From Ranitomeya imitator (Eukaryota): DNA of 64,000 bases. Positions within the stretch are counted from its first letter, which is position 1; each line of letters begins with the position of its first letter. The notes under the pieces are model-generated. The model did no database searches, was not told the origin of the DNA, and worked only from the letters and a program-made list of their open reading frames with translations. Location of the stretch: the NCBI RefSeq assembly GCF_032444005.1, contig NC_091290.1, forward strand, positions 135,718,001-135,782,000, read 5' to 3'. Made by a program: the position numbers and the translations under genes. Shown one piece after another: positions 4,784 through 59,807 of the stretch.

Positions 4784-4871
4784 GGAAATAAGCCCGGATC
4801 TGGAGGAAGCCGTGTCCGGTGTGGTTTGGTGCGCTCCACGTTTAGAGGTGGAAATTCCAGAACTGAAACCA
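4784..4871 (+). CDS. IST1: IST1-like paralog A, coding exon 3 (EISPDLEEAVSGVVWCAPRLEVEIPELKP)
   Basis: AG/GT bounded, 88 nt, phase 2 to 0. 14/29 identical to human IST1 ELDSGLAESVSTLIWAAPRLQSEVAELKI (recalled). Coding exons 1-2 are not in the window. Confidence 0.9.
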
Positions 4872-4971
4872 GTGGGTAATAGAATATCTGCATCATAACA
4901 TTTTTTTTTGCTAGGATGTATCTCTAGGAGAAAGTTTTTAAAATTTTGCCTTAAACTCTTAGGGTGATGTA

Positions 4972-6394: not shown

Positions 6395-6478
6395 GTCTCT
6401 ATTCAGTTGTGTAACAAGTATGGAAAAAAGTTTGGCAAGCTGTGCCAGAAAGGTAAAGCCGAATCTATCAATCGGAAA
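6395..6478 (+). CDS. IST1: IST1-like paralog A, coding exon 4 (VSIQLCNKYGKKFGKLCQKGKAESINRK)
   Basis: ttgcag/GTAAGT, 84 nt, phase 0-0. Aligns without gaps to IST1 VADQLCAKYSKEYGKLCRTNQIGTVNDR. Confidence 0.9.
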
Positions 6479-6964
6479 GTAAGTGCCAAATTTAGATTGG
6501 TATCTCAGTCATGTGTTTTAGGATACACAAGGTCCAGGGTACAGACATATACAGTGTATTATACCTTGTGCTCCATTTCATTAACTTTCGCACAACTTGA
6601 GACATTTTTCCCCAAATTCTGCATTCTTGCAGTTTTTGAAATTCATTATTCTCATGTTCTTCTTGACTTGGACAATCCCTTTGTGTTATGGTTGATCATT
6701 GACCAATGATTGCTTGATCACAGGGTGTCCCACTGCTTTCCCGGAATCTATTAGTGACCTGGGAAGCATGTGCTTATTTTCCTTGCAGCGCCATCACAGG
6801 AGAGATAAAGTATTACCTAGTACCCAATAGGTTGTCCATGGGTAGCCTAGACGTGGTGGGTCCTCCGGAGGGAAAGATGGTCTGTGTGGTCAATGTCTAA
6901 GAGATAAGTGTCCTCATAGGTTTTAAAAAATGGACAATCCCTTTAACACTTCCTCTGTCCACAG

Positions 6965-7075
6965 CTTATTCATGGGCTCAGCACCACAGCTCCTTCTAAA
7001 TGTCTGGTGGAGAAGTACCTTATGGAGATCAGCCACCATTATAACATCCCCTATGAAGCTGATGTCGCAGATTTA
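6965..7075 (+). CDS. IST1: IST1-like paralog A, coding exon 5 (LIHGLSTTAPSKCLVEKYLMEISHHYNIPYEADVADL)
   Basis: ccacag/GTGAGT, 111 nt, phase 0-0. Aligns without gaps to LMHKLSVEAPPKILVERYLIEIAKNYNVPYEPDSVVM. Confidence 0.92.
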
Positions 7076-20006: not shown

Positions 20007-22019
20007 GTGAGTCTTTCACTGTCATACATGATATTATTTGTAAAATGTTATGTTTTTATTGGTGATTGTTCTAAATATAATTGTAAATATCTATCAAGCT
20101 CTCATATTAAAATTGAAGAATGAATCTTGTCTTAGACCATCCAACTCCCCCTCTTCTGCAAAGAGGTAATTGAAGTTAGAATCTAATGGATAGCAGATCC
20201 CCCAGTTTGCCTAGAAATGCAGAGGGTGAAAGATTTATAGGCTTTGCCTGCATGTGTCTTAGAACTACAAACTGATGTGAGCTTCTTTATTCCATTCAAA
20301 CTATTATGTATACTGAGGTTTTTATGAACGGCATAGATATGATAGATATGAAATTCATATTTTCAGAGTTGTGGTGAACGTAATGTCTTACATCACTCGG
20401 TGGTGACCATAACACCTTCAAATTAAATATCAGTTAGATGGATGATGCTATCCATGCTGTGTTTCCTATTTATATAAAGGGGAAATCGTAATAGGAAACA
20501 AGACAGTAATATCTCCCGCCTGGGACCTCCAGGGGGTCAAGATATTGTAGAATTATTAAATCTCGTAATTTTCTAAGACTGAGCCGCATCCTATGGTTTT
20601 CTGAAGACCTGCCCTGTTGAGAGTCACCAGAGGGAGGGTGTGTGGGCGTAACTTGTGTTGATAAAAGCAAATGCCAAATTATATTCTTGGTCAGTCCTGG
20701 GAGATGCAGTTTTCTGTAGTTTTGTCCGTTGCCTCTACAAAATGAACACCTCCCTTTCATAAAAGCCAGTGTCAACACTGCGACAACAGGTTTAGTACAT
20801 ATCTTTTGTTTAACTTTTTTATTTAACATAATTGTTTATACTGTAGTGTTTTGTAACATCTTTGTATATTTTTATAAATGCCGCCTACTTTTTTTGAATT
20901 AAATACATAAAATGTAATAGCTGCGTTCCTCTTTCTATGTAAACCTCATGCCTGAAAGAATACGCTATCTCAATGGGCGTCCAATCGACCTCTGTAACCT
21001 ATTAGTAGTGGCAGCATTTTCTTTTGTTATGGTGGAGCTGGCAGTGACCGTACCGGGGTATATACATGAAAACACAAAAAAGCACAGTAAAACCAAAAAC
21101 ACACCGTTGCAAAAAAATCACAGTGGACAGCAAGTGCCAGTAAAAAGATGGAAAAAAACAGGGTATTTGGTTGATACGTTTTTTGCAAAAAATGTATATT
21201 AAGCCGCTCTAGCAAACGTCAAGGTATACCCATATCAGAGCAGTCCTAACTAATGTATGTGATCCCCATCTGATGTATTTAAAACCTGGTCATATGTACA
21301 ATACCTGTATGAGCAGGATTCAGAAATGTGTTGGAATCAGAGGAGTATATACCATACGCTCACCGTGAGTCCTTCGGTAACTGGCCTTGTAGGGAAAACA
21401 GCTGCAACCTTTTCCGTTACTCTTTGGTCAATCGCCCTGGTGGTTGGAGGCAGCAAAGTGCCGTCCCCTGACAGTGTTGGTGCTTATTGATGCTTTGTAG
21501 AGGTTTCATAAGCCAGCAAAAATGAAAATAGTTCATCTGCAGTGGATGAGTTGGTGCCGTCAAAGCAAATCTATATCCACTGTGTAAGAGCTGCCACTGA
21601 TGAAGGGGCAGCAAAGGTGGAAACTACTCTGGACACTATTTTATGGCTACAATAGTGACAGCCGAGACACAAAATATATCAGACATTTGCAAAATGTCAT
21701 CGTAGAGTCAAGAATAAAGGTCTTGTCTGGGACGGGGACATAATGATGACCATACCATATCCATGGGACAGACTATCAATGTAAGATCGGAGGGCATCTG
21801 ACACCTAGGACCCTAACCGATCGGCTGATATCTGCTCCAGCAGCGGCCAGTTGTAAGCAATGTATGCAGCGGAGAACAGTGTGAATGCTCAGTGTCTGCA
21901 TTAATTAGCAAATATTCTGAACACATATTGCTGTAAAAGAACTAAAGTAAAGGGAATAGAGGAGAATATGAGGACTAACATAGTAACGTGTATAACTGTG
22001 GTTTTCAGGTATTCTAAGC

Positions 22020-22107
22020 ATGTTTGGAACAAAGTTTAAAGCACAGAACCTGAGTGCCAGCCTAAAAAATGTCAACAGCCAAATAGAAAAGGTGAAAGAG
22101 AACAAAA
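22020..22107 (+). CDS. IST1: IST1-like paralog B, coding exon 1 (MFGTKFKAQNLSASLKNVNSQIEKVKENK)
   Basis: Acceptor at 22008/22009, ATG at +11, 88 coding nt, GTAAGT donor in phase 1. 9/29 identical to human MLGSGFKAERLRVNLRLVINRLKLLEKKK. Confidence 0.85.
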
Positions 22108-22594
22108 GTAAGTATAAGTAAGGGGTGCTTATACGTTAAAGAGAACCACCTACCCTGCCACCAATTCTTTATAGTGATATTAATAGGTTTATAAACATAT
22201 CACTGATTCTATATATACTGTGCATATATATATTGTTTAGCTTCTAGTTACACTTAATGTCTTTTATGGAGCTCGGCAGGAGGATGGTCCAAACATCTTG
22301 TAAAACTAACTACAAATCTGTATATGAGGCTTGTGCAAATCCTTCTGTCTCTTCATGTGATCCCAGACAGACTGGATGATGTGAGATCAGGGCTCTGTGG
22401 GGGCCGGATTATCACTTCCAAGACCCCATGACTAATGCAGTGGATGAAGGATATGTCATGCTTCATGCCCTTCCTTCAAAAACTGTTCAAAACCTGATGA
22501 AGGCAACAGGCGGTCACCAAGTATTGATGCAATTTAGTTTTCCCTTTTGTTCATTCATTTTCTATTGTGTTACTTGATAAACATAAACTATTAA

Positions 22595-22829
22595 GGCTGG
22601 AGTCACACTCAGCGTAAGACAATACGGTCCGTATATTACGGCCGTAATACGCTGAAAAGTCCCCGTAGCTCCTCCGTAGGCAGGGTGTTTCAGTGTTTTT
22701 TTGCGCATGGCATCCTCCGTATGTAATCCGTATGGCATCCGTACTGCGTGTTTTTCTCGCAGGCTTGCAAAACCAACATACGGCTATACAAGGGATCCAT
22801 GTGTAAAAAAAAAAAAAAAACATATATAC

Positions 22830-22865
<36 letters not shown>

Positions 22866-24247
22866 AGTGAGGCACATATATGTATATATATTATTACTTC
22901 ATACAGCGCTAGATAGCTTTAAAGCCGGTAATTCAATTACCGGCTTTTGCTATCTCCTTCCTAAAACCCGACATGATATGAGACCTGGTTTACATACAGT
23001 AAACCATCTCATATCACCTTTTTTTTTGCATTTTCCACACTACTAATGTTAGTAGTGTGTATGTGCAAAATTTGGCCGTTCTAGCTATTAAATTAAAGGG
23101 TTAAATGGCGGGAAAAAATTGACATGGGCTCCCGCGCAATTTTCTCCGCCAGAGTAGTAAAGCCAGTGACTGAGGGCAGATATTAATAGCCTGGAGAGGG
23201 TCCATGGTTATTGGCCCCCCCCTGGCTAAAAACACCTGCCCCCAGCCACCCCAGAAAAGGCACATCTGGAAGATGCGCCTATTCTGGCACTTGGCCACTC
23301 TCTTCCCATTCCCGTGTAGCGGTGGGATATGGGGTAATGAAGGGTTAATGCTACCTTGCTATTGTAAGGTGACATTAAGCCTAATTAATAATGGAGAGGC
23401 GTCAATTATGACACCTATCCATTATTAATCCAATTGTGGTAAAGGGTTAAAAAATACACACACATTATTAAAAATTATTTTAATGAAAAAATCACAAAGG
23501 TTGTTGTAATATTTTATTCTACGCTCAATCCACTCACTGAAGACCCTCGCTCTGTAACCCTCTGGCTTTACCACTCTGGCGGAGAAAATTGCGCGGGAGC
23601 CCACGCCAATTTTTTCCGCCTTTTAACCCTTTAATTTAATAGCTAGAACGGCCAAATTTTGCATATACACACTACTAACATTAGTAGTGTGGAATATGCA
23701 AAAAATGGGGCTATGAGTTGGTTTACTGTATGTAAACCAGGTCTCATATCATGTCGGGTTTAGGAAGGAGAAGGACAATTGAATTACCGGCTTTAAAGCT
23801 ATCTAGCGCTGGATGAAGTAATAATATATATACATATATGTGTCTCACTGACATATATATATATATATACCTATTCTATGTGTACACATTTATTCTACCT
23901 ATTCTAATGTAAGCTGTCAGTGTGATTTTACTGTACACCGCACTGAATTGCCGGCTTTTCTCTCTAACAGCGCTGCGTATTTCTCGCAAGTCACACTGCT
24001 GGTCCGTGTGTAATCCGTATTTTTGGGGCTTCTATAGACTTTCATTGGCGTTTTTTTGCGCAATACGGTGACAAACGCAGCATGCTGCGATTTTCTACGG
24101 CCGTAGAAAGCCGTATAATACTGATCAGTAAAATACGGCAGATAGGAGCAGGGGCATAGAGAATAATTGGGACGTTTGTTAGGCGTGTTTTACAGACATA
24201 TTTTCTGCACTCATACGTCCGTAAAACTCGCTAGTGTGACTCCAGCC
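22595..24247. mobile_element. 1.65-kb Harbinger-type non-autonomous element with long internal inverted repeats
   Basis: TAA|GGCTGGAGTCACAC...GTGTGACTCCAGCC|TTA; about 22860-23180 is inverted at about 23560-23870. Confidence 0.85.
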
Positions 24248-24444
24248 TTACACTTCCAATTTTGAAAGCCCCTTATTCTTAAAATACAACATTAAGAAGG
24301 AAAAGTCGTGAAATCACAGGATGGATAGACATGTTAATAATATGGAAATGATGAAAAAGTGGAAGCAAAAATTTAAAAGCATCTTGATTCAGTATCAAGT
24401 ATGAGTGTCACACACATAAATTCCTGCACTTGATGGATGTTTTA

Positions 24445-24806
24445 GGCTATGTTCACACTTTGCAGATTCCACTGCGGATTTTTCCGCAGCAGAATTACAA
24501 AATCCGCAGTGAAAACCCGTCGCGGTTTTTACTGCGGATTTATCGCGGTTTTAACTGTGGTTTCTTCTGCGGATTTTCATCTGCAGTTTTCTATTGGAGC
24601 AGGTGAAAATCCGCAGAAAAGAAGTGACATGCTGCGGAATGTAATCCGCAGCGTTTCCGCGCGTTTTTTTCCGCAGCATGTGCACTGCGTTTTTTGTTTC
24701 CCATAGGTTTACATTGTTCTGTAAACTCATGGGAAACTGCTGCGGATCCGCAGCGGTCAAATCCGCTGCGGATCCGCAGCAAAATCCGCAAAGTGTGAAT
24801 ATAGCC
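24445..24806. mobile_element. Harbinger-type MITE
   Basis: TTA|GGCTATGTTCACAC...GTGTGAATATAGCC|TAA. Confidence 0.88.
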
Positions 24807-24985
24807 TAAGGAATGTTCTGCATACGAATCATCAAGATCCTCTGCTGGCAGCTCCTCTATACCGCTAAATTGTCATGGAGGTGGTGCCACTTTCCTAAAG
24901 AGTCACTCTGTCCTGTCTGATAATCACAGTGTGGGGTCTTCATCAGTGGAATAAACAGTGATCTATTTTTTTTCTACTTTTACAG

Positions 24986-25166
24986 GTAAAACAGAGGAAC
25001 AGACTAAGAAAGAGATTGTACAGCACTTAGAAGCCAAAAGGGAATCTAGAGCCAGAATCGCAATGGAAAAAGTTATCCAACAGGAAAATCAGATTGAAGC
25101 CCTGGAGCTGGTCCAGATATGTTGCGATACACTGTCTAAAAAATTTGGATTAATCCAATCTATGGA
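24986..25166 (+). CDS. IST1: IST1-like paralog B, coding exon 2 (SKTEEQTKKEIVQHLEAKRESRARIAMEKVIQQENQIEALELVQICCDTLSKKFGLIQSM)
   Basis: 181 nt, phase 1 to 2, tacag/GTAAGA. Aligns without gaps to TELAQKARKEIADYLAAGKDERARIRVEHIIREDYLVEAMEILELYCDLLLARFGLIQSM. Confidence 0.93.
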
Positions 25167-25666
25167 GTAAGAAAGTGACGTCTTTATCCTTACATCCTGG
25201 TCTGCAACGCAACAGTCCTGCAAAATAATGACACACTATAATGCAGAGTGATTGCACGGACCCCTATTCTTGGGGTCACTGGGGATCCATAGGGTCATAT
25301 CAGGGTTGGTTCCAGATTTATACTCCCAATTGGACCCCCTTTGTTTTCAAATTTTCTTCCTAGCCTTCCATGAGCTATGCATTTTTTAATTTTTCAGTTG
25401 TTACAAGTTATAGTTTTTATCATTAGCATTTTGGGGACTATGCAACTTTATGATATTGGTCAATTTATACCGCCGTCTGACTGCACCCTAAATCGCAGTT
25501 TGACCTCTTAGATCCTGCTGTCAATCAGAGCTATCTCCATTCACACCAGTTAGACTCGGTGCAGGCGGTGTATAACACAGGTCCTGAGCCCACTCCGTAC
25601 ATGTATGATGATGCCACATGTTGAAACCTGCTCTAAGTGTCACTGTTGTGCTTTCTTTATATGCAG

Positions 25667-25754
25667 TAGCCTTGACCCGACCCTCTCGGAAGCCGTGTCT
25701 ACTGTGATCTGGGCAGCCCCACATCTGGAGACTGAGGTCCCCGAGCTGAAGAAA
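25667..25754 (+). CDS. IST1: IST1-like paralog B, coding exon 3 (SLDPTLSEAVSTVIWAAPHLETEVPELKK)
   Basis: 88 nt, phase 2 to 0, gcag/GTAGGT. 18/29 identical to the human exon. Confidence 0.93.
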
Positions 25755-26135
25755 GTAGGTAGAAATCACACAGTTTACAGCAATCAAGAAACTTGGAATG
25801 ACTGGAGCCCAATAATACATATTTAATTTAAATGGTCTCTATACTATCTCTAAAGTGATGGATTCACAGCTACCCTGCTCAGTACTGCTGTATAATGACC
25901 TCCATGCTGATGCTGCTTCTGGACATGTACTACGTAGAGACAGGAGAGCAGGACTCAGCCATGTCTGTGTACAGGACACATCGTAGCAGTTAGTTGAGTC
26001 AAAGCCAGGATTTAATGGGATTAAATAAAATAACAGAAGGACGTCTCCATTCTGCTGGACAAACCTCTGGCTTTGTGTGATTTCAGCCTTCTGACTGAAT
26101 GTATAATGATGAGACAATGTTTCCATGTATTACAG

Positions 26136-26219
26136 GTAGTTCAGCAACTTTGCCTGAGATACAGCAAAGAATATGGCAACCTCTGTAGGGTTAACAATCT
26201 TAAGACAGTTAATCCAAAA
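26136..26219 (+). CDS. IST1: IST1-like paralog B, coding exon 4 (VVQQLCLRYSKEYGNLCRVNNLKTVNPK)
   Basis: 84 nt, phase 0-0, tacag/GTAAGT; YSKEYG.LCR conserved. Confidence 0.93.
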
Positions 26220-26639
26220 GTAAGTAGAATGTGTATATTGTGTCCTTTGTGTTATCCAACTGGAATCCAGACAGAAAAATCCATAAATTAGACATTAAGA
26301 TGAAAAAAAGGTGTATGCACCATAGTGATAACCAATGCCGGTACCAGTGGGGTAACGCTAAGAGAGGCAGAAAACGTGAACCACCATCTTCACCACCCGG
26401 CGTCATCAGGATGCAGATACCATTCAATAGAATGGTGAAACAGGGATCTGTCGGGTCCTTTTACCACCATTCCGCCTGTGTGTCTGTTCAGAGCCTCTGT
26501 CCACACACAACACAGAACAGAGCGGAGCTTGGGGGGAACAGGGCTAAGTCAGTAGTTTTCTCTTTCTTTAATTTTGTCAGTGAGTACTTGTAGGGGACAT
26601 AGTGTATTTGAGGGCCATAAGACTGTGTGGGATCCATCA

Positions 26640-28430
26640 GACTGAGTGGGGGTCAGTGGGACCCTCATACTGTGTTGGATGCTGTGGGGTGCTATCATAC
26701 TGTCTGGGGGGGCTGTGTGGCTATCATACTGTGTTGGAGGCTGTGGGGTACTATCATACTGTTTAGGGGGTTGTGTGGCCATCATACTGTCTGGGGGGGG
26801 GGGGGGTGGCTGCGTGGCCATCTTACTGTGTTGGAGGCTGTGATGTGCCATCATACTGTCTGGGGGGGCTGTGTGGCCATCATACTGTCTGGGGGGGCTG
26901 TGTGGCCATCATACTGTGTTGGAGGCTGTGGGGTACTATCATACTATTTAAGGGGTTGTGTGGCCATCATACTGTCTGGAGGGGATGTGTGGCCATCATA
27001 CTGTCTGGGGGGGCTGTGTGGCCATCATACTGTGTTGGAGGCTGTGGGGTACTATCATACTGTTTAGGGGGTTGTGTGGCCATCATACTGTCTGGGGGGG
27101 CTGTGTGGTCATCATACTGTCTGGGGGGGCTGTGTGGCCATCATACTGTCTGGGGGGGCTGTGTGGCTATCATACTGTCTGGGGGGGCTGTGTGGCCATC
27201 ATACTGTCTGGGGGGGCAGTGTGGCCATCATACTGTCTGGGGGGGCTGTGTGGCTATCATACTGTGTTGGAGGCTGTGAGGTGCTATCATACTGTGTTGG
27301 GGGCTGTAAGGTGTATCATACTGTCTGGGGGGCTGTGTGGCCATCATACTGTGTTGGAGGCTATGAGGTGCTATCATACTGTCTGGGGGGTTGTGTGACC
27401 ATCATACTGTCTGGGGGGGGGGCTGTGTGGCCATCATACTAATGTGTTAGAGGCTGTGAAGTGCTATCATACTGTCTTTGGGGTTGTGTGACCATCATAC
27501 TGTCTGGGGGGGCTGTGTGGCCATCATACTGTCTGGGGGGGGGGGCTGTGTGGCCATCATACTACTGTGTTAGAGGCTGTGAAGTGCTATCATACTGTCT
27601 GTGGGGTTGTGTGGCCATCATACTGTCTGGGGGGCTGTGTGGCCATCATACTGTCTGGGGGGGGGCTGTGTGGCCATCATACTACTGTGTTAGAGGCTGT
27701 GAGGTGCTATCATACTGTCTGTAGGGTTGGGTGGTCATCATACTGTCTGGGGGGTGGCTGTGTGGCCATCATACTGTCTGGGGGGGAGGTTGTGTGGCCA
27801 TCATACTACTGTGTTAGAGGCTGTGAGGTGCTATCATACTGTCTGTGGGGTTGTGCGGTCATCATACTGTCTGGGGGGGTTGTGTGGCCAACATACTGTG
27901 TTGGAGGCTGTGGGTTGCTATCATACTGTCTTGGGTGCTATAGAGGACATCATATTGTCTGGGGAACTGTGGAGGACATCATAATGTCTGGGGGTCTGTG
28001 AGGCCATAATGCTGTGTGGGGACTGTGGGCCAGTAAACTGTGTAAAGGGGCTGTTGGGGCAGCATACTGTGTGGGTCGCACCATTGCGGTATCATACTTT
28101 GCTGGGCACACTGTGGGTCATTATACTGTGCATGTGAGAGGGGCACTGTGGGGTAATTCACTAAATGGGAATCATACTGTATATTGGAGACTTTTTCGAG
28201 GCATCATCATCTATTGGGGTTCTGAAAGGGGTATCCTAGTGGGTAAGAACACAAAGGGACTTCAATAGGGGCAAAATTACTGTGTTAGTACCGAAAACAA
28301 GCCTCTCTCCCTGTCTTTAAAAGTTGGCAAGTATGCCCTTCTGTAACTGTGCAAACGTGTCGTGACCCTGCCTGTGACACCAATTAGTTCTTTTGGAGGG
28401 AGTCTTTTGCTATGGGGCCCGTGATTTCTG
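26640..28430. repeat. Degenerate ~20-bp minisatellite (TGTGGCCATCATACTGTCTGGGGG) within a probable non-autonomous DNA element
   Basis: Read directly; a related array lies in opposite orientation at about 29940-30780. Confidence 0.75.
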
Positions 28431-28527
28431 TGTACACGCCTGGCATTTATACGAAGGTAAAAATGGAAATGCTTGGTAAAATTGCATATTTATAGTAAGT
28501 GGCAGGTCTTTAAATTTCTTCTTACAG

Positions 28528-28617
28528 GTGATCGAATTGCTCACTACTGAAAAGACGTCCATAGTCACGATAAACAGACATCTGGCCAACATTGCCAAAG
28601 AGTTTGGTATAGACAAG
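28528..28617 (+). CDS. IST1: IST1-like paralog B, coding exon 5 (VIELLTTEKTSIVTINRHLANIAKEFGIDK)
   Basis: 90 nt, phase 0-0, ttacag/GTTGGT. Aligns to LMHKLSVEAPPKILVERYLIEIAKNYNV but is 7 codons shorter than the 111-nt exon in paralog A. Confidence 0.85.
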
Positions 28618-29091
28618 GTTGGTATTAATAAGGATGGAGCAGATAAAAATCTGCCATAAATATGAGATGAGTGTCCTCAGTGTCGGACTGGGCTGGCAAA
28701 GGCCATCCAATAACATTGACTCTCGGGGCCACTGTTCAGCTACATGCAAAAATGACCTGACCCTAGTACGCAAATTCACTTTTGCCTCTATGTAATTGTA
28801 ATTTGGCTAGCTTGTTTACTGAATGATTAGATGATTTACACATTACATAAAAAGTTATCAAGTGCCATAGAATTGCTCATTTGCTCATCAGTACTACTTC
28901 ATAGCGGCCTACCGGAGGATTCTCCTGTTTCCCTGAGGACCAGTCCGAGCCTGAGGGTCCTGAATTCTCCAACATGAAGAGACTCTACATCAGACAGAAT
29001 CCAAGGCATAACCAATCCTCGTATACACCCTTCTAGCTATTAGATGCCATATTTGCATTCAATATTAATAACTGTTGTTTGTTTTTTTTAG

Positions 29092-29181
29092 GGTGACTTT
29101 ACTTATGGCAGTTCTGGTTCTGAAGCAAGTTTCGACAGTTTTACACAACCTACTTCATCGTGCCCATATCCACAAAGCAAC
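29092..29181 (+). CDS. IST1: IST1-like paralog B, predicted exon 6 (GDFTYGSSGSEASFDSFTQPTSSCPYPQSN)
   Basis: T-tract-tag/GTGAGT, 90 nt, phase 0-0; end weakly like IST1 TPFSYPLPKGP. Confidence 0.72.
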
Positions 29182-29437
29182 GTGAGTCTGACTATGGTAT
29201 TAGGTTAGACTTTTTCTGGTGGAAGAGGAGACTACTCTCAAAGGGATTGTCCACTTTTGACAATTCAGTTTTGTTACAAAAGCCACCTATGTTCAGCAGT
29301 AATGTGCACTGTACGGGGCAGAAGTGGTCAACTCTCCTGCAACACAAGTATAGGAGAAATTATACTGTGCGGAAGGAAATCAACGGGTCGGGATTTACAG
29401 AATGAGAGTTCCTCTTTGTAGTTGCTGCCTGCTTTAA

Positions 29438-29640
29438 CCCTGCTGTTGTCTTCGGTCAAAAACGACCGACCTTGAACTTCAATATTCTTTAAAATATTCA
29501 AGATGCGGCTCTAAAACCCGTGGCCGACCGACCCATCCTCATTTAAGTCAATCTACCACAAGTTTCAGAACCGGATCTTGAACACCCCAAAAATACCAAA
29601 GTTCAAAATAGGTCTCCCCAGACCGAAGACAACAGCAGGG
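29438..29640. mobile_element. piggyBac-type MITE (203 bp)
   Basis: TTAA|CCCTGCTGTTGTCTTCGGTC...GACCGAAGACAACAGCAGGG|TTAA, perfect 20-bp TIR. Confidence 0.88.
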
Positions 29641-31492
29641 TTAATGAATGAAAATCCCAAATGAGGGTCTCCCCTTATCTCAGAATAGTCTAATATAGGA
29701 GGGCTTTCCTGGGCTTGGATATCCTAAGGAGAGGTCATCAATATCAGATAGGTGGTGATCTGACACCAGTCAATTTCATACCTCCAAACTCTGAGGGACG
29801 GTAAAAAGATTCTCATTGCAGCTCATGTAGCGTGCCACGGCAAAGCATTTTACAGTTTTGTCACATCCTTGACCCCACACAGTAATTTTTGTATGCCAGT
29901 AGATAACTATTGCCCCTGGTAATACTCTATCTAGCCCCCATGCAGTATGATTCCCACACAATTCCTCATTCACCCAGATGCCCTAAGTGCCCTTCGTACA
30001 TGATGCCCCTACAGTGCCCCAAACATTTTAAGATGCCGCCAGTACTTCCAACACAGTATGATGCCCCCACAATTCCTTCACACAGTATGATGACCCCATA
30101 GTCCCTCGCTCAAACAGCATGATGATCCCACAGTCCATTTTCACCGTAACAGGACTCCATAGTCCCTCACCCACACAATATGATTCTCTCACAGTCCCCC
30201 TACGCAGTATAATGTACTCATAGTATCCCCACACTGTATGATGCCTCAACGTCTCCACACAAAGTATGACGCCCCAACAGTTCCTCACCCTCACAGCATG
30301 ATGTCCACACTGTCCCCCTATACAGAATGATACCCCCACAGTCCTTCACTCACATAGCATGATGACCCCACAGTCCATTTACATAGTATCATGCCCCCAT
30401 AGTCCATCACCCATACAATATGATACCTCCACAGTCCTCCTACACAATATGATACCTCCACAGTCTACCTACACAGTATGATGCTTCAACGCCCCCCACA
30501 CAAAGTATTATGCCTCAACAGTTTCTTCTCCACACAGTACGATGCCCATACAGTACGATACCCCTACTTTCCCCTCACACAGTATGATGCCCCCACATTC
30601 TCCTCATGCACAGTATGATATCCCTATTGTCCACTAATGTAATGTAATGCCCCATGCTTCTTCTACACAGTTTAATGACTCCATAGACCCCCTCACACAG
30701 TATGATTCCCCCTCAGTCCCTCATGCACACAGTATGATATACTGCAATCCATCACTCCCAGTATGATGCCCCAGTTTTTCCCCCTGTAAACTGGTGCTTG
30801 CACTGTGCCCCTTACCTGCAATATGGCAATTAAGCAAGAAAATACCAACTGCAACGCCACCATTAAATTCAACTATACAGTATCTGTGACCTAAAGATAC
30901 AGATGACTTAGGACTAGTTTTGAGTCAACGTGCTTGTGTGCTAACCGAGTGTATTTGATGCACTCGAAAAATATGTTCAAGTCACCATGGCTGCATGTCT
31001 CGTGGGTGTTAGACAGACGCAACACATGCAGGGATTACCTAACAAACAGCATGGTCGGATAGCGCCTTACCCAATCACGTTGGCTCATACCTACTCAGGA
31101 CATACTGCCAACTTTCTAGGATAGCTCCCCAAATCAGGGACTGTGTCTCGTTGGCTCCTGGACGGTTGGAAGGCATGGGCACCTCCGCCGATCAGTTACT
31201 TGCAGGTGCTGCAGCTGCCAATAGTAAATGGTGTACATAGTCGGGTTACCAGAACGCCGTGCACTGTCTACTGGCCGTTCTCAAGTACTGCAGCTCAGCT
31301 CCCATTACTTCAATGGGATTTACATTTCAAATCTGGCAATCAAGGCTATATAAAGCTGAGCCAGGGTATATGATCTATCATAAAAAGAATTGTTGCATTT
31401 AATTTTTTAAATTAAAAAAAATTGCTGCAAAGAAAAAGTAATAAGTATATATCAATGCACCGGTCTTATGATATAATGCGGACTTTTTATAG

Positions 31493-31600
31493 GAACACTT
31501 TCCAGATGCAGAGAAGATTTACAAAGACGTCGTTGGCGATTCTCCTTCCGAGGCACATGGAATGCCCTGGTCTGCAGAACATGAGACTCCAGGAAATTCG
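31493..31600 (+). CDS. IST1: IST1-like paralog B, predicted exon 7 (EHFPDAEKIYKDVVGDSPSEAHGMPWSAEHETPGNS)
   Basis: ttttatag/GTCAGT, 108 nt, phase 0-0. Confidence 0.62.
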
Positions 31601-32491
31601 GTCAGTCTTAAAAAAAAAAGCTTATGGACCACTGAGACTTTCTAAGGTTCTAAAGCAGAGCTCCAAATTCATTGCATCCCTCCACTCCACCATAGAAGTA
31701 AATTAGTAAATTGTTGCAACATTTAGCCACCACTAGGGGGAGCAATATTAATATTTAATTACGGTAGATCCTATGAGAATTTTTGCAGTGACTGCAGTCA
31801 ACATTTCTACTGACTGAGCATGTGTGACCACCGTCGCATTAGGTGGACATTCTGAGAGGCAATCAAAAGAACAGTAGGGGGCGCCATATCAAGTCTGTAG
31901 CAGCAATATCCAGACACAGGAGCATATTTCAAAACCGATTTCAATAGAAAAATAATGTTTTGTGTGATATAAAGAAAAAAAATGTGATACTTAATAGTGG
32001 GACAACATCTTTAATTAACCCCATAATGTACCTATAACGTTTATTTTCATCATAGGTTGATAAGGAATGTATGAAGCCGGCTCAGGAGTTGACCCTGCTT
32101 CCTACCATCTCCTTGTAATTACAGCAGCCGATCATTGTAGTTTTACCACTTAAATGCTGCTGCCAGTTTTTGTTATATTTAAATCCGCCATACGGTTCTG
32201 GAGATATTGGCCTTTTTATTTAGTGAAAATTTTTATTGTCTTTAACAAAAAGGCGTTGCTCACAATATGATAATTCTGAGAACATTAAAGACACGTCCCA
32301 GAGGATCCTGTGAGCCAGGCCTCCTAGGAAAAATCATAAATTAGAAATAAATAAAAAACCGTATGAGAGATATAAAAAAAAATAACGGTGTATTCAGTGG
32401 AGCAGTGGGGATAAAGTATGAGCAAAAAGTGGTCACATCCTCCTTAATGAACAATATAAGGAATTAATTTAGAATTTTTCTCTTCTCACAG

Positions 32492-32522
32492 GAAAATCCT
32501 GACTTTAATATATCGAATGAAG
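32492..32522 (+). CDS. IST1: IST1-like paralog B, predicted small exon 8 (ENPDFNISNE)
   Basis: Strong polypyrimidine-cacag acceptor, GTGAGC donor, 31 nt, phase 0 to 1, like the small IST1 exon. Confidence 0.62.
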
Positions 32523-32901
32523 GTGAGCACTTAATTCTGACACCGATCAGTGTTGCTTGAATGATCCAAAGGATGGGAATTGAGATAGTGATAATGGTCT
32601 GATTCGCTATGGTACATGAGCGTGAGCATTTAGTACATTTAAAGGGATTGTCCAGACTAATTAAAAACATTATTGTGGGAATGGATGGTGTAGAAATAAC
32701 AAAATTGGACTTACTCACATGCTGCAACCCCCCGTAGATTCAGTTCAGGCTTCTCCTGCAGTCTTCTCCGACACCAGAAGTGTCATTTTTTGTACCGCAA
32801 AAACCTGATTTATACAATAGGTGATGATAAGTTCCCCTTAAAGGATTTGTCCACGTTTGCATTTAAAGTGCATGTATTAGTTAATTCATTGTCTTTGATA
32901 G

Positions 32902-32954
32902 ATGTCGGATTTAAGCCAGAGCTGTGGAAAGACGACAAAAATAAGAAATTATGA
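32902..32954 (+). CDS. IST1: IST1-like paralog B, predicted last coding exon (DVGFKPELWKDDKNKKL*)
   Basis: gtctttgatag acceptor, phase 1, TGA at 32952-32954. Total CDS 813 nt = 270 aa plus stop. Confidence 0.5.
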
Positions 32955-33286
32955 ACACCAAAGACCGAAGACTCACTAAGTCACACCGCAATTAAACAAT
33001 TATGGAAGAAGTGACAATGCCCTGCAAATCCGGAGGAAATGGTCACAAAGCTTGCTATAAATATTGCTCCGTGTTAGTTTTAGAGGCGTCATATTTATTG
33101 TGTATGAAACGTGATGTAATGGAAATTACTTATGTACCAATTGTTGAAATTTACTGTAATTTACTGTAAGATACTTGCTCCTGATCCTGGCAGGTTGTCC
33201 CAAGATTAATCCTAACTCTAATCCCTTCCGTGATAAAGTGTAATGAGTGACGGACTTGTAGGGGGCTCAGGAGCATAACTGGGTAG

Positions 33287-34081
33287 TGTTGTGAATTCTG
33301 TTATCGAACTCCCTCCTGTGGTCATGAATGGTACTTCGGCGAGTTCTGTCCATGGACTCCCTCTGGTGGCTGTGAGTGGAGCTGCTGCTTCTGAGGTTCC
33401 TTCCACAGGTGACGTAGTTTATTCTTTGGCTGGCTGCTCTATTTAACTCCACTCAGATCGTTACTCCATGCCAGCTGTCAATGTTCTTGTACTGGTTCAG
33501 TTCGCTCTTGGATCTTTCTGGTGACCTGTCTACTCCAGCAGAAGCTAAGTCCCTGCTAGTTAATTATTTGTTCTTTGTTTTCTTGTCCAGCTTGCTATCA
33601 TGATTTTGCCTTGCTAGCTGGAAGCTCTGGGATGCAGAGTGGCATCTCCGCACCGTTAGTCGGTGCGGAGGTCTTTTTGCACACTCTGCGTGGTCTTTTT
33701 GTAGTTTTTTGTGCTGACCGCAAAGATACCTTTCCTATCCTCAGTCTGTTTAGTAAGTCTGGCCTCCCTTTGCTGAAACCTGTTTCATTTCTGTGTTTGT
33801 GACTTTCATCTTAACTCACAGTCAATATATGTGGGGGGCTGCCTTTTCCTTTGGGGAATTTCTCTGAGGCAAGGTAGGCTTTATTTTCTTTCTCTAGGGC
33901 TAGTTAGCTCTTAGGCTGTGAAGAGGCGTCTAGGCAGTGTTAGGTACGCTCCACGGCTATTTCTAGTTGTGTGATAGGATTAGGGGTTGCGGTCAGCAGA
34001 GCTCCCACTTCCCAGAGCTTGTCCTGTGTGAGTTTAACCATCAGGTCGTTCCGGGTGCTCCTAACCACCAGGTCCATAACA
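33287..34081. mobile_element. Solo LTR (Gypsy-type)
   Basis: TGTTGTG...CATAACA termini with 4-bp TSD GTAG. Confidence 0.85.
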
Positions 34082-34509
34082 GTAGAGGCAGGAAGGGCAT
34101 GCTGTGAGGGAGCTGAGTACTTAAGATTGAAGGACAAATAGACACTTTGCCAACGATTAACATGGGAGATGATTTTGAGCTTGGATTAAATAGTTTAATG
34201 TATTTGACTGCAGTTCTTCCAAGAAGATCACTTCTGACCTGACTTCTCTGAAGAGTAGTTGGGTGTAGCTGACTCACGCTGGTTTCTGACACTTCTGAGC
34301 TGATGGCACTGCTTCCAGTTTCAAAGGGAAGTAAGCCTGATATGATCTGCTGCACTAAGTTTCCTTGGCTTATCACTTTATTTTTCGTAATGTTGCCCAT
34401 TTCTGATAAGGCAAATACTTATCAATCGTGTAATACCGTCAGAAAGGCGTTTGATTGTCTCCAGATTTTTCTGTAGCAACAACTTGAAACATCCAGCCAA
34501 TGTCATTAA

Positions 34510-35076
34510 AGGGAACCTGTCACCCCCCAAAATGGAAGTTGAGCTAAGCCCACCGGTATCAGGGGCTTATCTACAGCATTCTGTAATGCTGTAGATAAGC
34601 CCCTGATGTATCCTGAAAGATGAGAAAAAGAGGTTAGATTATACTCACCTGGGCGGGCAGTCCGATCCGATGGGCGTCGCGTTCCGGGGCCTCCCATCTT
34701 CATAGGATGACGTCCTCTTCTTGTCTTCACGCTGCGGCTCCGGCGCTGGCGTACTTTGTCTGCCCTGTTGAGGGCAGAGCAAAGTACTGCAGTGCGCAGG
34801 CGGCGGGAAAGGTCAGAGAGGCCCGGCGCCTGCGCACTGCAGTACTTTGCTCTGCCCTCAACAGGTCAGACAAAGTACGCCTGCGCCAGAGTTGTGGCGT
34901 GAAGACAGAAGAGGACGTCATCGCAAGAAGATAAGAGGCGTTGGACCGCGACACCCACTGGACCGGACCACAGCGGGACCGCCCCTGGGTGAGTATAATC
35001 TAACCTCTTTTTCTCATCTTTCAGGATACATCGGGGGGCTTATCTACCCCTCGATTTTGGGGGTGACAGGTTCCCT
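34510..35076. mobile_element. Palindromic Kolobok/T2-type MITE
   Basis: TTAA|AGGGAACCTGTCACCCCC...GGGGTGACAGGTTCCCT|TTAA. Confidence 0.87.
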
Positions 35077-35099
35077 TTAAGAACTATCTTCAGTATAAA

Positions 35100-35340
35100 G
35101 AAGAACAAGGAGTCCTAAACTCTCCAGAATTGTCTCCCTTCAAGCAAATCTAGAACGTTATTGGTCATCAATTGCAAAGGTAGCTGCCAGCAGGGTATCT
35201 TGATGATTTTCTCAAGTGCATTCAGCGCAGCAGAACATTCCTCAGATCACGATAACCCATAACCTCATTAATGGCAGCCGGGGGCTGTGTGTGATGGGAT
35301 TTCTGTACGTGGCGCTCACACTCCATGCTGAATAAATTGA
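35100..35340 (+). mobile_element. Small decayed Tc1 transposase 3' fragment
   Basis: Translates to SPELSPFKQI*NVIGHQLQ, resembling the Tc1 SPDLSPIE motif. Confidence 0.45.
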
Positions 35341-59580: not shown

Positions 59581-59668
59581 ATGTTGAAGGGTGGGTTCAA
59601 GGGTGAGCGCCTCCGGGTCAACCTGAGACTGGCCATCAATCGTTTGAAGTTGCTGGAAAAGAAAAAAA
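59581..59668 (+). CDS. IST1: IST1 paralog C, first coding exon (MLKGGFKGERLRVNLRLAINRLKLLEKKK)
   Basis: Acceptor at 59569/59570, ATG at +11, 88 nt, GTGAGT donor in phase 1. 25/29 identical to the human IST1 N-terminus. Later exons not found in the window. Confidence 0.95.
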
Positions 59669-59807
59669 GTGAGTCTGGGTCTATTAGTGATGTACTATGG
59701 CCATGGTGGTATCAAATTTCTACACCATCAGCTGATTTAATTCATCCAACATTCCTGGTCCGAGTATAGACCATGATATCTGGGCTGACTGCTTCTCTCC
59801 TCACCTA

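What the first reader, a model, noticed from the sequence alone, without database searches (positions are those of the whole stretch)
22020..32954. IST1-B looks like an ESCRT-III decoy: remodelled helix 1 and no MIT-interacting motifs
Seen: helix 1 loses most arginines (net charge of residues 1-29 about +4 vs +7 in human) and has Glu at the position of human K27. The 270-aa model ends DVGFKPELWKDDKNKKL, with no LPELPSVP (MIM2) or DDLSRRFEEL (MIM1) equivalent. Established (recalled): IST1 recruits VPS4, LIP5 and spastin through these MIMs; R16E/K27E was engineered to curb IST1 self-polymerisation; truncated retroCHMP3 copies lacking the C-terminal tail inhibit ESCRT-dependent virus budding in some mammals. 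Inference: IST1-B may be a CHMP1-binding, VPS4-blind modulator or antiviral factor.
Basis: partly seen in the sequence, partly recalled or inferred. Interest (0 to 1): 0.72.

Follow-up and report, generated by a model that had tools for sequence, protein, structure and literature searches.

The report
MIM-less IST1 paralog of frogs
This is a real, expressed, selectively maintained tandem copy of the membrane-remodelling gene IST1. It has lost both tail motifs that recruit VPS4 and other MIT-domain proteins. It has also changed the residues canonical IST1 uses to bind CHMP1B, so the 'CHMP1-binding decoy' idea is only half supported.

Summary
Window 22020-32954 (+) carries a nine-exon, all GT-AG gene for a 270-aa IST1-family protein ending DVGFKPELWKDDKNKKL. 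Helix 1 has no arginine (net charge +4, against +7/+8 in canonical IST1) and Glu at position 27. No MIM1 or MIM2 is encoded anywhere in the window.

Transcript contigs from four runs (three studies) join exons 7-8-9 and run unspliced through the stop. RefSeq models in three other dendrobatid genera end at the same codon.

- **Origin:** it belongs to a fast-evolving neobatrachian clade of tandem, intron-bearing IST1 duplicates lying just upstream of canonical IST1.
- **Tail loss:** MIM2 is missing clade-wide. MIM1 survives in Mixophyes, is degenerate elsewhere, and was cut off in dendrobatids by a nonsense codon (TGA where Bufo has AGA).
- **Selection:** residues 90-148 are tightly constrained (pN/pS at most 0.06), while helix 1 evolves near-neutrally (0.5-1.7).

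'VPS4/MIT-blind' fits. 'CHMP1-binding' does not: R16E/K27E actually blocks CHMP1B co-assembly rather than self-polymerisation, and IST1-B also has N64 and H165 at two positions needed for CHMP1B MIM binding. An antiviral role is untested.

Another scan note (s1-312568) had already flagged the three-gene IST1 cluster.

The parts
22020..22107 (+). Exon 1 (start codon; helix 1, residues 1-29 plus 1 nt)
   Evidence: Same start and an 88-nt exon in the RefSeq models of R. variabilis, P. terribilis and D. tinctorius. The canonical Mixophyes IST1 exon 1 is also 88 nt.
24986..25166 (+). Exon 2 (end of helix alpha1 and helix alpha2)
   Evidence: Pfam Ist1 match at 45 bits, E 1.4e-11. 181 nt, phase 1, as in canonical IST1.
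25667..25754 (+). Exon 3 (alpha3; conserved WAAP motif)
   Evidence: Pfam Ist1 match at 28 bits. Lies in the region with pN/pS at most 0.06.
26136..26219 (+). Exon 4 (alpha4 and alphaA)
   Evidence: 84 nt, as in canonical IST1. Strongly constrained.
28528..28617 (+). Exon 5 (alpha5, with His at position 165)
29092..29181 (+). Exon 6 (linker, conserved SCPYPQSN motif)
   Evidence: tblastn with orthologs; splice sites; motif conserved across paralogs.
31493..31600 (+). Exon 7 (linker, FPDAEKIY motif)
   Evidence: Transcript contigs join 31600 to 32492 in four runs.
32492..32522 (+). Exon 8 (31 nt)
   Evidence: Joined on both sides in transcript contigs.
32902..32954 (+). Exon 9, coding part (GFKPELW motif, then TGA stop at 32952-32954)
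   Evidence: The stop aligns with the Bufo AGA (Arg) codon and with sense codons in Pseudophryne, Mixophyes and Engystomops.
32955..33340 (+). 3' UTR, at least this far. It includes the former coding sequence of the lost tail and the mutated old stop (TAA to CAA).
   Evidence: Contigs run collinearly from 32900 to 33261, 33316 or 33340. DNA alignment with the Bufo and Engystomops last exons.

Best explanation
IST1-B is a functional, transcribed member of an old neobatrachian-frog family of tandem IST1 duplicates. It keeps the closed IST1 N-terminal ESCRT-III core.

It lost its MIT-recruiting tail in three steps:
1. MIM2 was deleted in the common ancestor of the paralogs.
2. MIM1 decayed in hyloid frogs.
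3. A nonsense mutation cut off what remained in the dendrobatid ancestor.

The protein therefore cannot recruit VPS4, LIP5, spastin or other MIT proteins through the known motifs. That much is shown by sequence.

The two surfaces canonical IST1 uses to hold CHMP1B have also been rewritten: the basic face of helix 1, and the pocket formed by alpha1, alpha2 and alpha5 that receives the CHMP1B MIM helix. It probably does not coat CHMP1B filaments the canonical way. This is inferred from mutational data on human IST1.

Selection is concentrated on alpha3-alpha4-alphaA and part of alpha2. These are the elements reported to make IST1-IST1 contacts in filaments. My preferred mechanism, an inference only, is that IST1-B works through IST1-type polymer contacts. 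It would act as a MIM-less subunit or cap that dilutes MIT-cofactor recruitment on IST1 assemblies, rather than as a CHMP1 decoy.
For: - **Gene model and family:**
- **Orthologs:** same nine-exon models and same stop in three dendrobatid genera.
- **Expression:** spliced transcript contigs in four runs from three studies, with exon 9 terminal.
- **Origin by tandem DNA duplication:** canonical IST1 and the paralogs share nine exons, the same phases and identical lengths for exons 1-4. The Mixophyes paralog lies 9 kb upstream of canonical IST1 on the same strand. In the window, canonical-type exon 1 sits at 59581.
- **Phylogeny:** paralog clade supported at 98/100, stem length 1.02, with long branches.
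- **Stepwise tail loss:**
- **Selection:** overall pN/pS is 0.18-0.50. Residues 90-148 are at most 0.06 and helix 1 is 0.5-1.7 (one near-identical pair, with no nonsynonymous change, gives 0). The contrast gives Fisher p of 0.0004 to 0.05.
- **Fold:** the ortholog model has pLDDT above 90 over the core. RMSD to closed human IST1 is 0.8-1.2 A over 171 residues, and the tail is disordered.
- **CHMP1B determinants changed:** K16, E27, N64 and H165, set against the mutational data read.
- **MIM function:**
- **IST1-IST1 contacts through alpha2, alpha3, alpha5 and alphaA:**
Against: - No binding or assembly data exist for any frog IST1 paralog.
- The human mutations were to Ala, Asp or Glu, not to the Asn and His seen here, so CHMP1B binding might persist or have co-evolved with frog CHMP1.
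- Y165 is kept in R. variabilis, Bufo and Mixophyes, and R16 is conservatively Lys.
- Conservation of residues 90-148 may simply reflect fold requirements, since W105 and P108 are invariant in all IST1s. It need not mark a polymer interface.
- I had no atomic coordinates, so no contact map was computed.
- Contigs cannot exclude rare alternative 3' exons.
Confidence: 0.55

Rival explanations
1. IST1-B still binds CHMP1 but cannot recruit VPS4. It would act as an ESCRT-III decoy or antiviral factor, analogous to retroCHMP3.
For: - Both MIMs are absent.
- The closed IST1 core is intact.
- The family evolves fast, with repeated lineage-specific duplication: two copies each in Mixophyes and Engystomops, and IST1-A here.
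- Helix 1 pN/pS reaches 1.5-1.7 in some pairs.
- retroCHMP3 sets a precedent for truncated ESCRT-III duplicates that block budding (abstracts).
Against: - Three experimentally defined CHMP1B-binding determinants are altered: E27, N64 and H165.
- It is not a retrocopy.
- Alpha5 is retained, so there is no constitutively open, poisoning form.
- Helix 1 pN/pS is not significantly above 1, on at most 14 changes.
- From my own recollection, not verified here (searches failed): human IST1 depletion blocks cytokinesis but not HIV-1 budding.
Confidence: 0.15
2. Neofunctionalised IST1 core with a new partner set. The rewritten helix 1 and alpha5 surface, together with the conserved tail motifs (SCPYPQSN, FPDAE-IY, GFKP-D/E-LW), bind different proteins. 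The partner could be a co-evolved CHMP1-like subunit or a non-ESCRT protein.
For: - Paralog helix 1 is not random. It carries its own conserved signature: S12, S14, K16, Q21, an acidic residue at 23, and K29 in 7-9 of 9 paralogs.
- The tail motifs are conserved across more than five families of frogs.
- Tail pN/pS is 0.17-0.77, below 1.
Against: - Within dendrobatids, helix 1 evolves near-neutrally.
- Two of the tail motifs also exist in canonical IST1 (PYP and PDxxVGIYEE; TKPAIPW at the start of the last exon). They are inherited rather than new.
- No partner was identified.
Confidence: 0.2
3. A slowly decaying duplicate with little or no function, transcribed only because it sits next to canonical IST1.
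For: - Evolution is much faster than in the canonical gene. Core identity between Ranitomeya and Bufo is about 61% for IST1-B, against 165 of 174 positions (about 95%) for canonical IST1.
- Functional motifs were lost progressively and a nonsense mutation followed.
- Helix 1 is near-neutral.
Against: - Intact nine-exon open reading frames with canonical splice sites persist in at least eight species across Hyloidea, Myobatrachoidea and Ranoidea.
- pN/pS is at most 0.06 over residues 90-148, measured after the truncation.
- The core is confidently foldable.
- Spliced mRNA contigs reach k-mer depth 200 in one run.
Confidence: 0.1

Closest known systems
Canonical vertebrate IST1 (CHMP8), e.g. human IST1 N-terminal domain (PDB 3FRR, 6TZ4, 6TZA) and the frog IST1 encoded just downstream
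   Same: - Same Pfam Ist1 domain.
- Ungapped alignment over residues 1-175 at 43% identity.
- Same closed fold, RMSD about 1 A.
- Same nine-exon gene structure and phases.
- Shared linker motifs (PYP, PDA..IY).
   Different: - No MIM2 and no MIM1.
- All four helix 1 arginines lost, with K23E and K27E.
- Y64N and Y165H at the CHMP1B-MIM pocket.
- Branch lengths 5-20 times longer.
- The tail ends 17 codons into the last exon.
[quoted passage not shown]
   Same: A lineage-specific duplicate of an ESCRT-III subunit whose C-terminal VPS4-binding motif was removed by a premature stop. It is kept alongside an intact parent gene.
   Different: - IST1-B arose by tandem DNA duplication and has introns.
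- It is much older.
- It retains alpha5 and most of the linker.
- Its parent, IST1, works in the closed state on the outside of CHMP1B tubes.
- No antiviral activity has been tested.
Engineered IST1 N-terminal domain R16E/K27E and Y165A mutants
   Same: IST1-B naturally carries Glu27 and a non-Tyr residue at 165, and it lacks the tail, as the 1-189 constructs do.
   Different: - The engineered R16E/K27E protein no longer co-assembles with CHMP1B but still homopolymerises.
- Whether the natural combination K16/E27/N64/H165 behaves the same way is unknown.
Mixophyes fleayi IST1 paralog (305 aa, P0129) and other neobatrachian 'IST1 homolog' RefSeq models
   Same: Same clade, same exon structure, same remodelled helix 1 signature and N64. 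MIM2 is missing in all.
   Different: Mixophyes keeps an intact MIM1 core (L-A-N-R-L-K-E-L-K). Pseudophryne has a degenerate one. Bufo and Engystomops have none but read 22-23 codons further than the dendrobatids.

Membership tests
IST1 / ESCRT-III (Pfam PF03398 Ist1) | Sequence match to the Ist1 domain | tested here: met
   Exon 2 alone scores 45 bits against a cut-off of 33.6. The ortholog P0122 matches human IST1 PDB chains at E 2e-44.
IST1 / ESCRT-III (Pfam PF03398 Ist1) | Closed ESCRT-III core fold (alpha1-alpha2 hairpin, alpha3, alpha4, alphaA, alpha5 packed back) | tested here: met
   AlphaFold2 model of the 97%-identical ortholog P0122: pLDDT above 90 for residues 10-170. Foldseek top hits are IST1 chains, TM 0.9, RMSD 0.8-1.2 A.
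IST1 / ESCRT-III (Pfam PF03398 Ist1) | Gene structure shared with canonical IST1 | tested here: met
   Nine exons, phases 0,1,2,0,0,0,0,0,1, and exons 1-4 of 88, 181, 88 and 84 nt in both genes.
Canonical (functionally complete) IST1 | Type-2 MIM (LPxLPxxP; human 316-343) | tested here: not met
   Absent from the protein, the window and all 10 paralogs. Present in all full-length canonical IST1s examined.
Canonical (functionally complete) IST1 | C-terminal helical MIM1/3 (LxxRLxxLK; human 344-366) | tested here: not met
   The stop lies 17 codons into the last exon. The read-through frame carries no MIM1 either. Mixophyes P0129 retains it.
Canonical (functionally complete) IST1 | Basic helix 1 face needed for co-assembly with CHMP1B (R16, K27) | tested here: not met
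   K16 and E27, plus R10N, R12S, R21Q and K23E. These positions are invariant in 18 canonical sequences. Mutational meaning.
Canonical (functionally complete) IST1 | CHMP1B MIM1-binding pocket residues (Y64, E67, Y165) | tested here: inconclusive
   N64, E67 and H165 in the window. Y165 is kept in R. variabilis, Bufo and Mixophyes. The human tests used Y64D and Y165A.
retroCHMP3-like truncated ESCRT-III restriction factors | Origin by retrotransposition (intronless copy) | tested here: not met
   Nine exons with eight introns, lying in tandem with the parent gene.
retroCHMP3-like truncated ESCRT-III restriction factors | Premature stop removing the VPS4-binding tail | tested here: met
   TGA at the codon that is AGA in Bufo. 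Shared by four dendrobatid sequences.
retroCHMP3-like truncated ESCRT-III restriction factors | Inhibition of ESCRT-dependent virus budding | not testable with these tools
   Needs virus-like-particle release or infection assays.
retroCHMP3-like truncated ESCRT-III restriction factors | Signature of positive selection | tested here: inconclusive
   Whole-gene pN/pS is 0.18-0.50. Helix 1 is 0.5-1.7 on 9-14 nonsynonymous changes, not distinguishable from 1.

The most novel reading that the evidence does not exclude
Neobatrachian frogs keep a family of MIM-less IST1 subunits as endogenous dominant modulators of ESCRT-III/MIT-cofactor recruitment. These subunits would be incorporated through IST1-IST1 contacts. 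Their rapid turnover and fast-evolving helix 1 would reflect conflict with ESCRT-hijacking pathogens such as ranaviruses. That would make them a tandem-duplicate counterpart of mammalian retroCHMP3, arising independently in amphibians.
Probability: 0.12. Interest if true: 0.8.

Novelty: new variant of a known kind. Interest (0 to 1): 0.55.

Why it matters
IST1 is the ESCRT-III subunit that binds the most MIT-domain cofactors (11 of 19 tested, PMC9477494). A naturally occurring IST1 has lost both MIMs and has also changed its CHMP1B-facing surfaces, yet selection has kept it for tens of millions of years. It amounts to a natural separation-of-function allele.

It shows which parts of the IST1 core remain indispensable once cofactor recruitment and CHMP1B coating are removed: residues 90-148.

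The graded series across frogs offers ready-made material for testing what each element does:
- Mixophyes, with MIM1 intact
- Pseudophryne, with MIM1 degenerate
- Bufo and Engystomops, with no MIM1
- dendrobatids, truncated

If the family proves to modulate ESCRT function or virus exit, it would be a second, independent case of the retroCHMP3 principle, in a different subunit and a different vertebrate class.

Tried and rejected
- **Intron read-through.** I suspected the short tail was an artefact and that MIM exons lay downstream. This is rejected. The KPELW segment is conserved coding sequence in eight species. The stop is shared by four dendrobatid sequences. Transcript contigs run through it unspliced. 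No MIM-like coding exists between 32954 and the next gene.
- **GFKP-E-LW as a mutated MIM2.** Rejected. Exon comparison places the motif opposite canonical TKPAIPW at the start of the last exon. The MIM2 segment further on is simply missing.
- **IST1-C as a third divergent paralog.** Rejected. Its exon 1 is identical to the N-terminus of the canonical R. imitator IST1.
- **Searches that gave little.**
  - The single-exon HMMER search gave only one hit above 50% identity, a fragment.
  - A literature search for amphibian IST1 duplications found nothing relevant.
  - Bajorek 2009a/b could not be opened. The statement that IST1 is dispensable for HIV-1 budding therefore rests on my memory only.
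- **IST1-A tail.** tblastn for its tail exons gave only a weak hit at 20723-20755.
- **Not attempted.**
  - An IST1-B/CHMP1B complex model, because the structure tool folds single chains only.
  - A CHMP1 copy-number survey in frogs, because no tool-derived CHMP1 sequence was available.

Full report
**1. What is in the sequence**

The interval 22020-32954 (+) holds a nine-exon gene. Every intron has AG/GT boundaries, and the spliced frame gives 270 residues ending DVGFKPELWKDDKNKKL before a TGA at 32952-32954. Exon 2 alone matches Pfam Ist1 above the curated threshold.

The closest database protein is the RefSeq 'IST1 homolog' of Ranitomeya variabilis (P0122, 270 aa, 9 differences). Phyllobates terribilis (270 aa) and Dendrobates tinctorius (272 aa) have the same nine exons, the same phases and the same stop position. 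The window is therefore from a Ranitomeya close to R. variabilis. The canonical-type exon 1 at 59581-59673 is identical to the N-terminus of the R. imitator IST1 protein P0143.

**2.

The alignment to human IST1 is ungapped over residues 1-175, so human numbering applies. Residues 1-29 contain no Arg and six Lys, net +4. Canonical vertebrate IST1s have 3-4 Arg and net +7/+8.

Positions R10, R12, N14, R16, L17, N20, R21, K23, L24, K27 and K28 are invariant or nearly so in 18 canonical sequences. In IST1-B they read N, S, S, K, N, S, Q, E, K, E, N. Glu at position 27 is confirmed.

Six-frame motif scans and tblastn with full-length frog IST1s find no MIM2 or MIM1 coding sequence anywhere in the 64 kb.

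**3. Is the 3' end real, and is the gene expressed?**

Runs holding 24-34% of the sampled words of 31400-33400 were found. I laid four of them, from three studies, on 31200-35200.
- Each has a contig that joins 31600 to 32492 and 32522 to 32902, with GT..AG ends.
- Each then continues collinearly through the stop to 33261-33340.
- There, high-copy repeats break the contigs.
- In X1 and X2 the contig has 923 and 725 nt upstream of exon 7, enough for the 621 nt of upstream coding sequence plus a 5' UTR.
- No variant is reported at the stop.

The mRNA therefore exists and exon 9 is terminal in the dominant form. Contigs cannot exclude rare isoforms.

**4. Origin and history**

A profile search returned related 'IST1 homolog' models only from neobatrachian frogs: Bufo, Engystomops (two), Pseudophryne, Mixophyes (two), Hyperolius and the dendrobatids. 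It also returned canonical IST1s from all anurans.

In a maximum-likelihood tree of the core domain, the paralogs form one clade (98/100, stem length 1.02). Their terminal branches are 5-20 times longer than those of canonical IST1.

The canonical Mixophyes gene and the paralogs share nine exons, identical phases and identical lengths for exons 1-4. The Mixophyes paralog lies 9 kb upstream of canonical IST1 on the same strand, as IST1-B does here. This is a tandem DNA duplication, not a retrocopy.

The canonical last exon encodes, in order, TKPAIPW, MIM2 and MIM1.
- The paralog last exon starts with the homologous GFKP-D/E-LW and lacks the MIM2 segment in every species.
- Mixophyes still has an intact MIM1 core (LANRLKELK).
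- Pseudophryne has a degenerate one.
- Bufo and Engystomops have none.
- All four dendrobatid sequences have TGA at the codon that is AGA in Bufo, TCA in Pseudophryne, AAA in Mixophyes and AAC in Engystomops.
- Downstream, the former coding sequence is still alignable and the old stop has become CAA.

**5. Selection**

Pairwise Nei-Gojobori ratios among the dendrobatids are 0.18-0.50 overall. Constraint is very uneven.

| Region | pN/pS |
|---|---|
| Residues 90-148 (alpha3, alpha4, alphaA) | at most 0.06 (0-1 nonsynonymous vs 4-6 synonymous changes) |
| Helix 1 (residues 1-31) | 0.5-1.7 (0 in the near-identical window vs R. variabilis pair) |
| Alpha5 | about 0.2-0.3 |
| Tail | 0.17-0.77 |

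The contrast between helix 1 and residues 90-148 is significant (Fisher p = 0.0004, 0.013 and 0.05 for three pairs). All of this divergence post-dates the nonsense mutation, so the truncated protein is being maintained. Helix 1 is not demonstrably under positive selection, because the counts are small.

**6. Structure**

An AlphaFold2 model of P0122 gives pLDDT above 90 across residues 10-170. The tail is disordered apart from short, low-confidence helices at 213-220 and 259-262. Foldseek places the core on human IST1 in its closed state at TM 0.9 and RMSD 0.8-1.2 A (8V2Q, 3FRR, 6TZ4, 6TZA).

**7. What this means for mechanism**

IST1's two MIMs account for its binding to 11 of 19 MIT domains, including VPS4A/B, LIP5 and spastin (PMC9477494). 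IST1-B lacks both, so 'MIT-blind' is well founded.

The 'CHMP1-binding' half is not.
- Nguyen et al. state that IST1(1-189) R16E/K27E cannot co-assemble with CHMP1B because the interface is destabilised, yet it still forms homopolymer tubes (10.1101/798181).
- Talledge et al. show that the CHMP1B MIM1 helix sits on a surface made by the alpha1-alpha2 hairpin and alpha5. Y165A abolishes both binding and co-assembly, and alpha2 mutations including Y64D and E67A also block binding (10.1101/386532).
- IST1-B has E27, N64 (8 of 10 paralogs) and H165 (three of four dendrobatid sequences).
- Helix 1 and alpha5 are its least canonical-like parts (20% and 26% identity). Residues 90-130 are 68% identical.

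I therefore infer that canonical coating of CHMP1B is weakened or lost.

The same paper describes IST1-IST1 contacts through alpha3 and alpha2 of neighbouring subunits, and through alpha5 and alphaA between turns. The constrained part of IST1-B overlaps these elements. This motivates, but does not prove, a model in which IST1-B joins IST1-type assemblies as a MIM-less subunit.

**8. Comparison and novelty**

The nearest analogy, retroCHMP3, shares the principle of a truncated ESCRT-III duplicate. It differs in origin, in age and in what was removed.

The genes are already annotated generically as 'IST1 homolog' in several frog genomes. I found no paper describing an amphibian IST1 paralog family or its MIM loss. 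I rate it a new variant of a known kind, of moderate interest. The descriptive findings are solid and the function is open.

The three-gene cluster had already been noted by this scan (s1-312568). That note gave me the lead that the window holds other IST1 copies, which I then checked myself.

Noticed in passing
window 4788-4874, 6404-6481, 6962-7066 (+): Exons 3-5 of another IST1 copy ('IST1-A'). It is very divergent (terminal branch 1.61) and not confidently placed inside or outside the paralog clade. Its tail exons were not found, apart from a weak CPLPLQNEHLP match at 20723-20755.
   Followed up: partly
window 59581-59673 (+): Exon 1 of the canonical IST1 ('IST1-C'). It is identical to the N-terminus of the R. 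imitator IST1 protein P0143 and 87% identical to fish IST1. The gene runs off the window end.
   Followed up: partly
window 26694-28021 and 30051-30626: Two arrays of the same 29-bp satellite lie in opposite orientation in introns 4 and 6, bracketing exons 5 and 6 (90 + 90 nt, in frame). Such inverted intronic repeats can favour exon skipping or circular RNA.
   Followed up: no
window 32983-32990: An 8-nt insertion relative to the other three dendrobatids creates an ATTAAA 37 nt after the stop. Transcript contigs nevertheless run past it to about 33261-33340.
   Followed up: no
window 33210-35100: Very high contig depth (hundreds to thousands), many variants and many strand-switch joints in all four runs. 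This looks like a highly repeated, transcribed element downstream of IST1-B.
   Followed up: no
L003 19624-29708 (-), Dendrobates tinctorius: Directly after the IST1-B ortholog, a 113-aa Ist1-domain gene is called on the opposite strand. This differs from the same-strand layout in the window and in Mixophyes.
   Followed up: no
P0148 (rabbit, 322 aa) and P0128 (pika, 323 aa): Lagomorphs have their own divergent 'IST1 homolog' clade (100/99 support, stem length 0.42). It keeps a MIM1-like C-terminus, and the pika protein also keeps a MIM2-like motif. This is an independent IST1 duplication in mammals.
   Followed up: no
P0004/P0129 (Mixophyes) and P0123/P0127 (Engystomops): Two paralog-clade genes each in Mixophyes and Engystomops, one much shorter or far more divergent than the other. 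This indicates repeated lineage-specific duplication within the family.
   Followed up: partly
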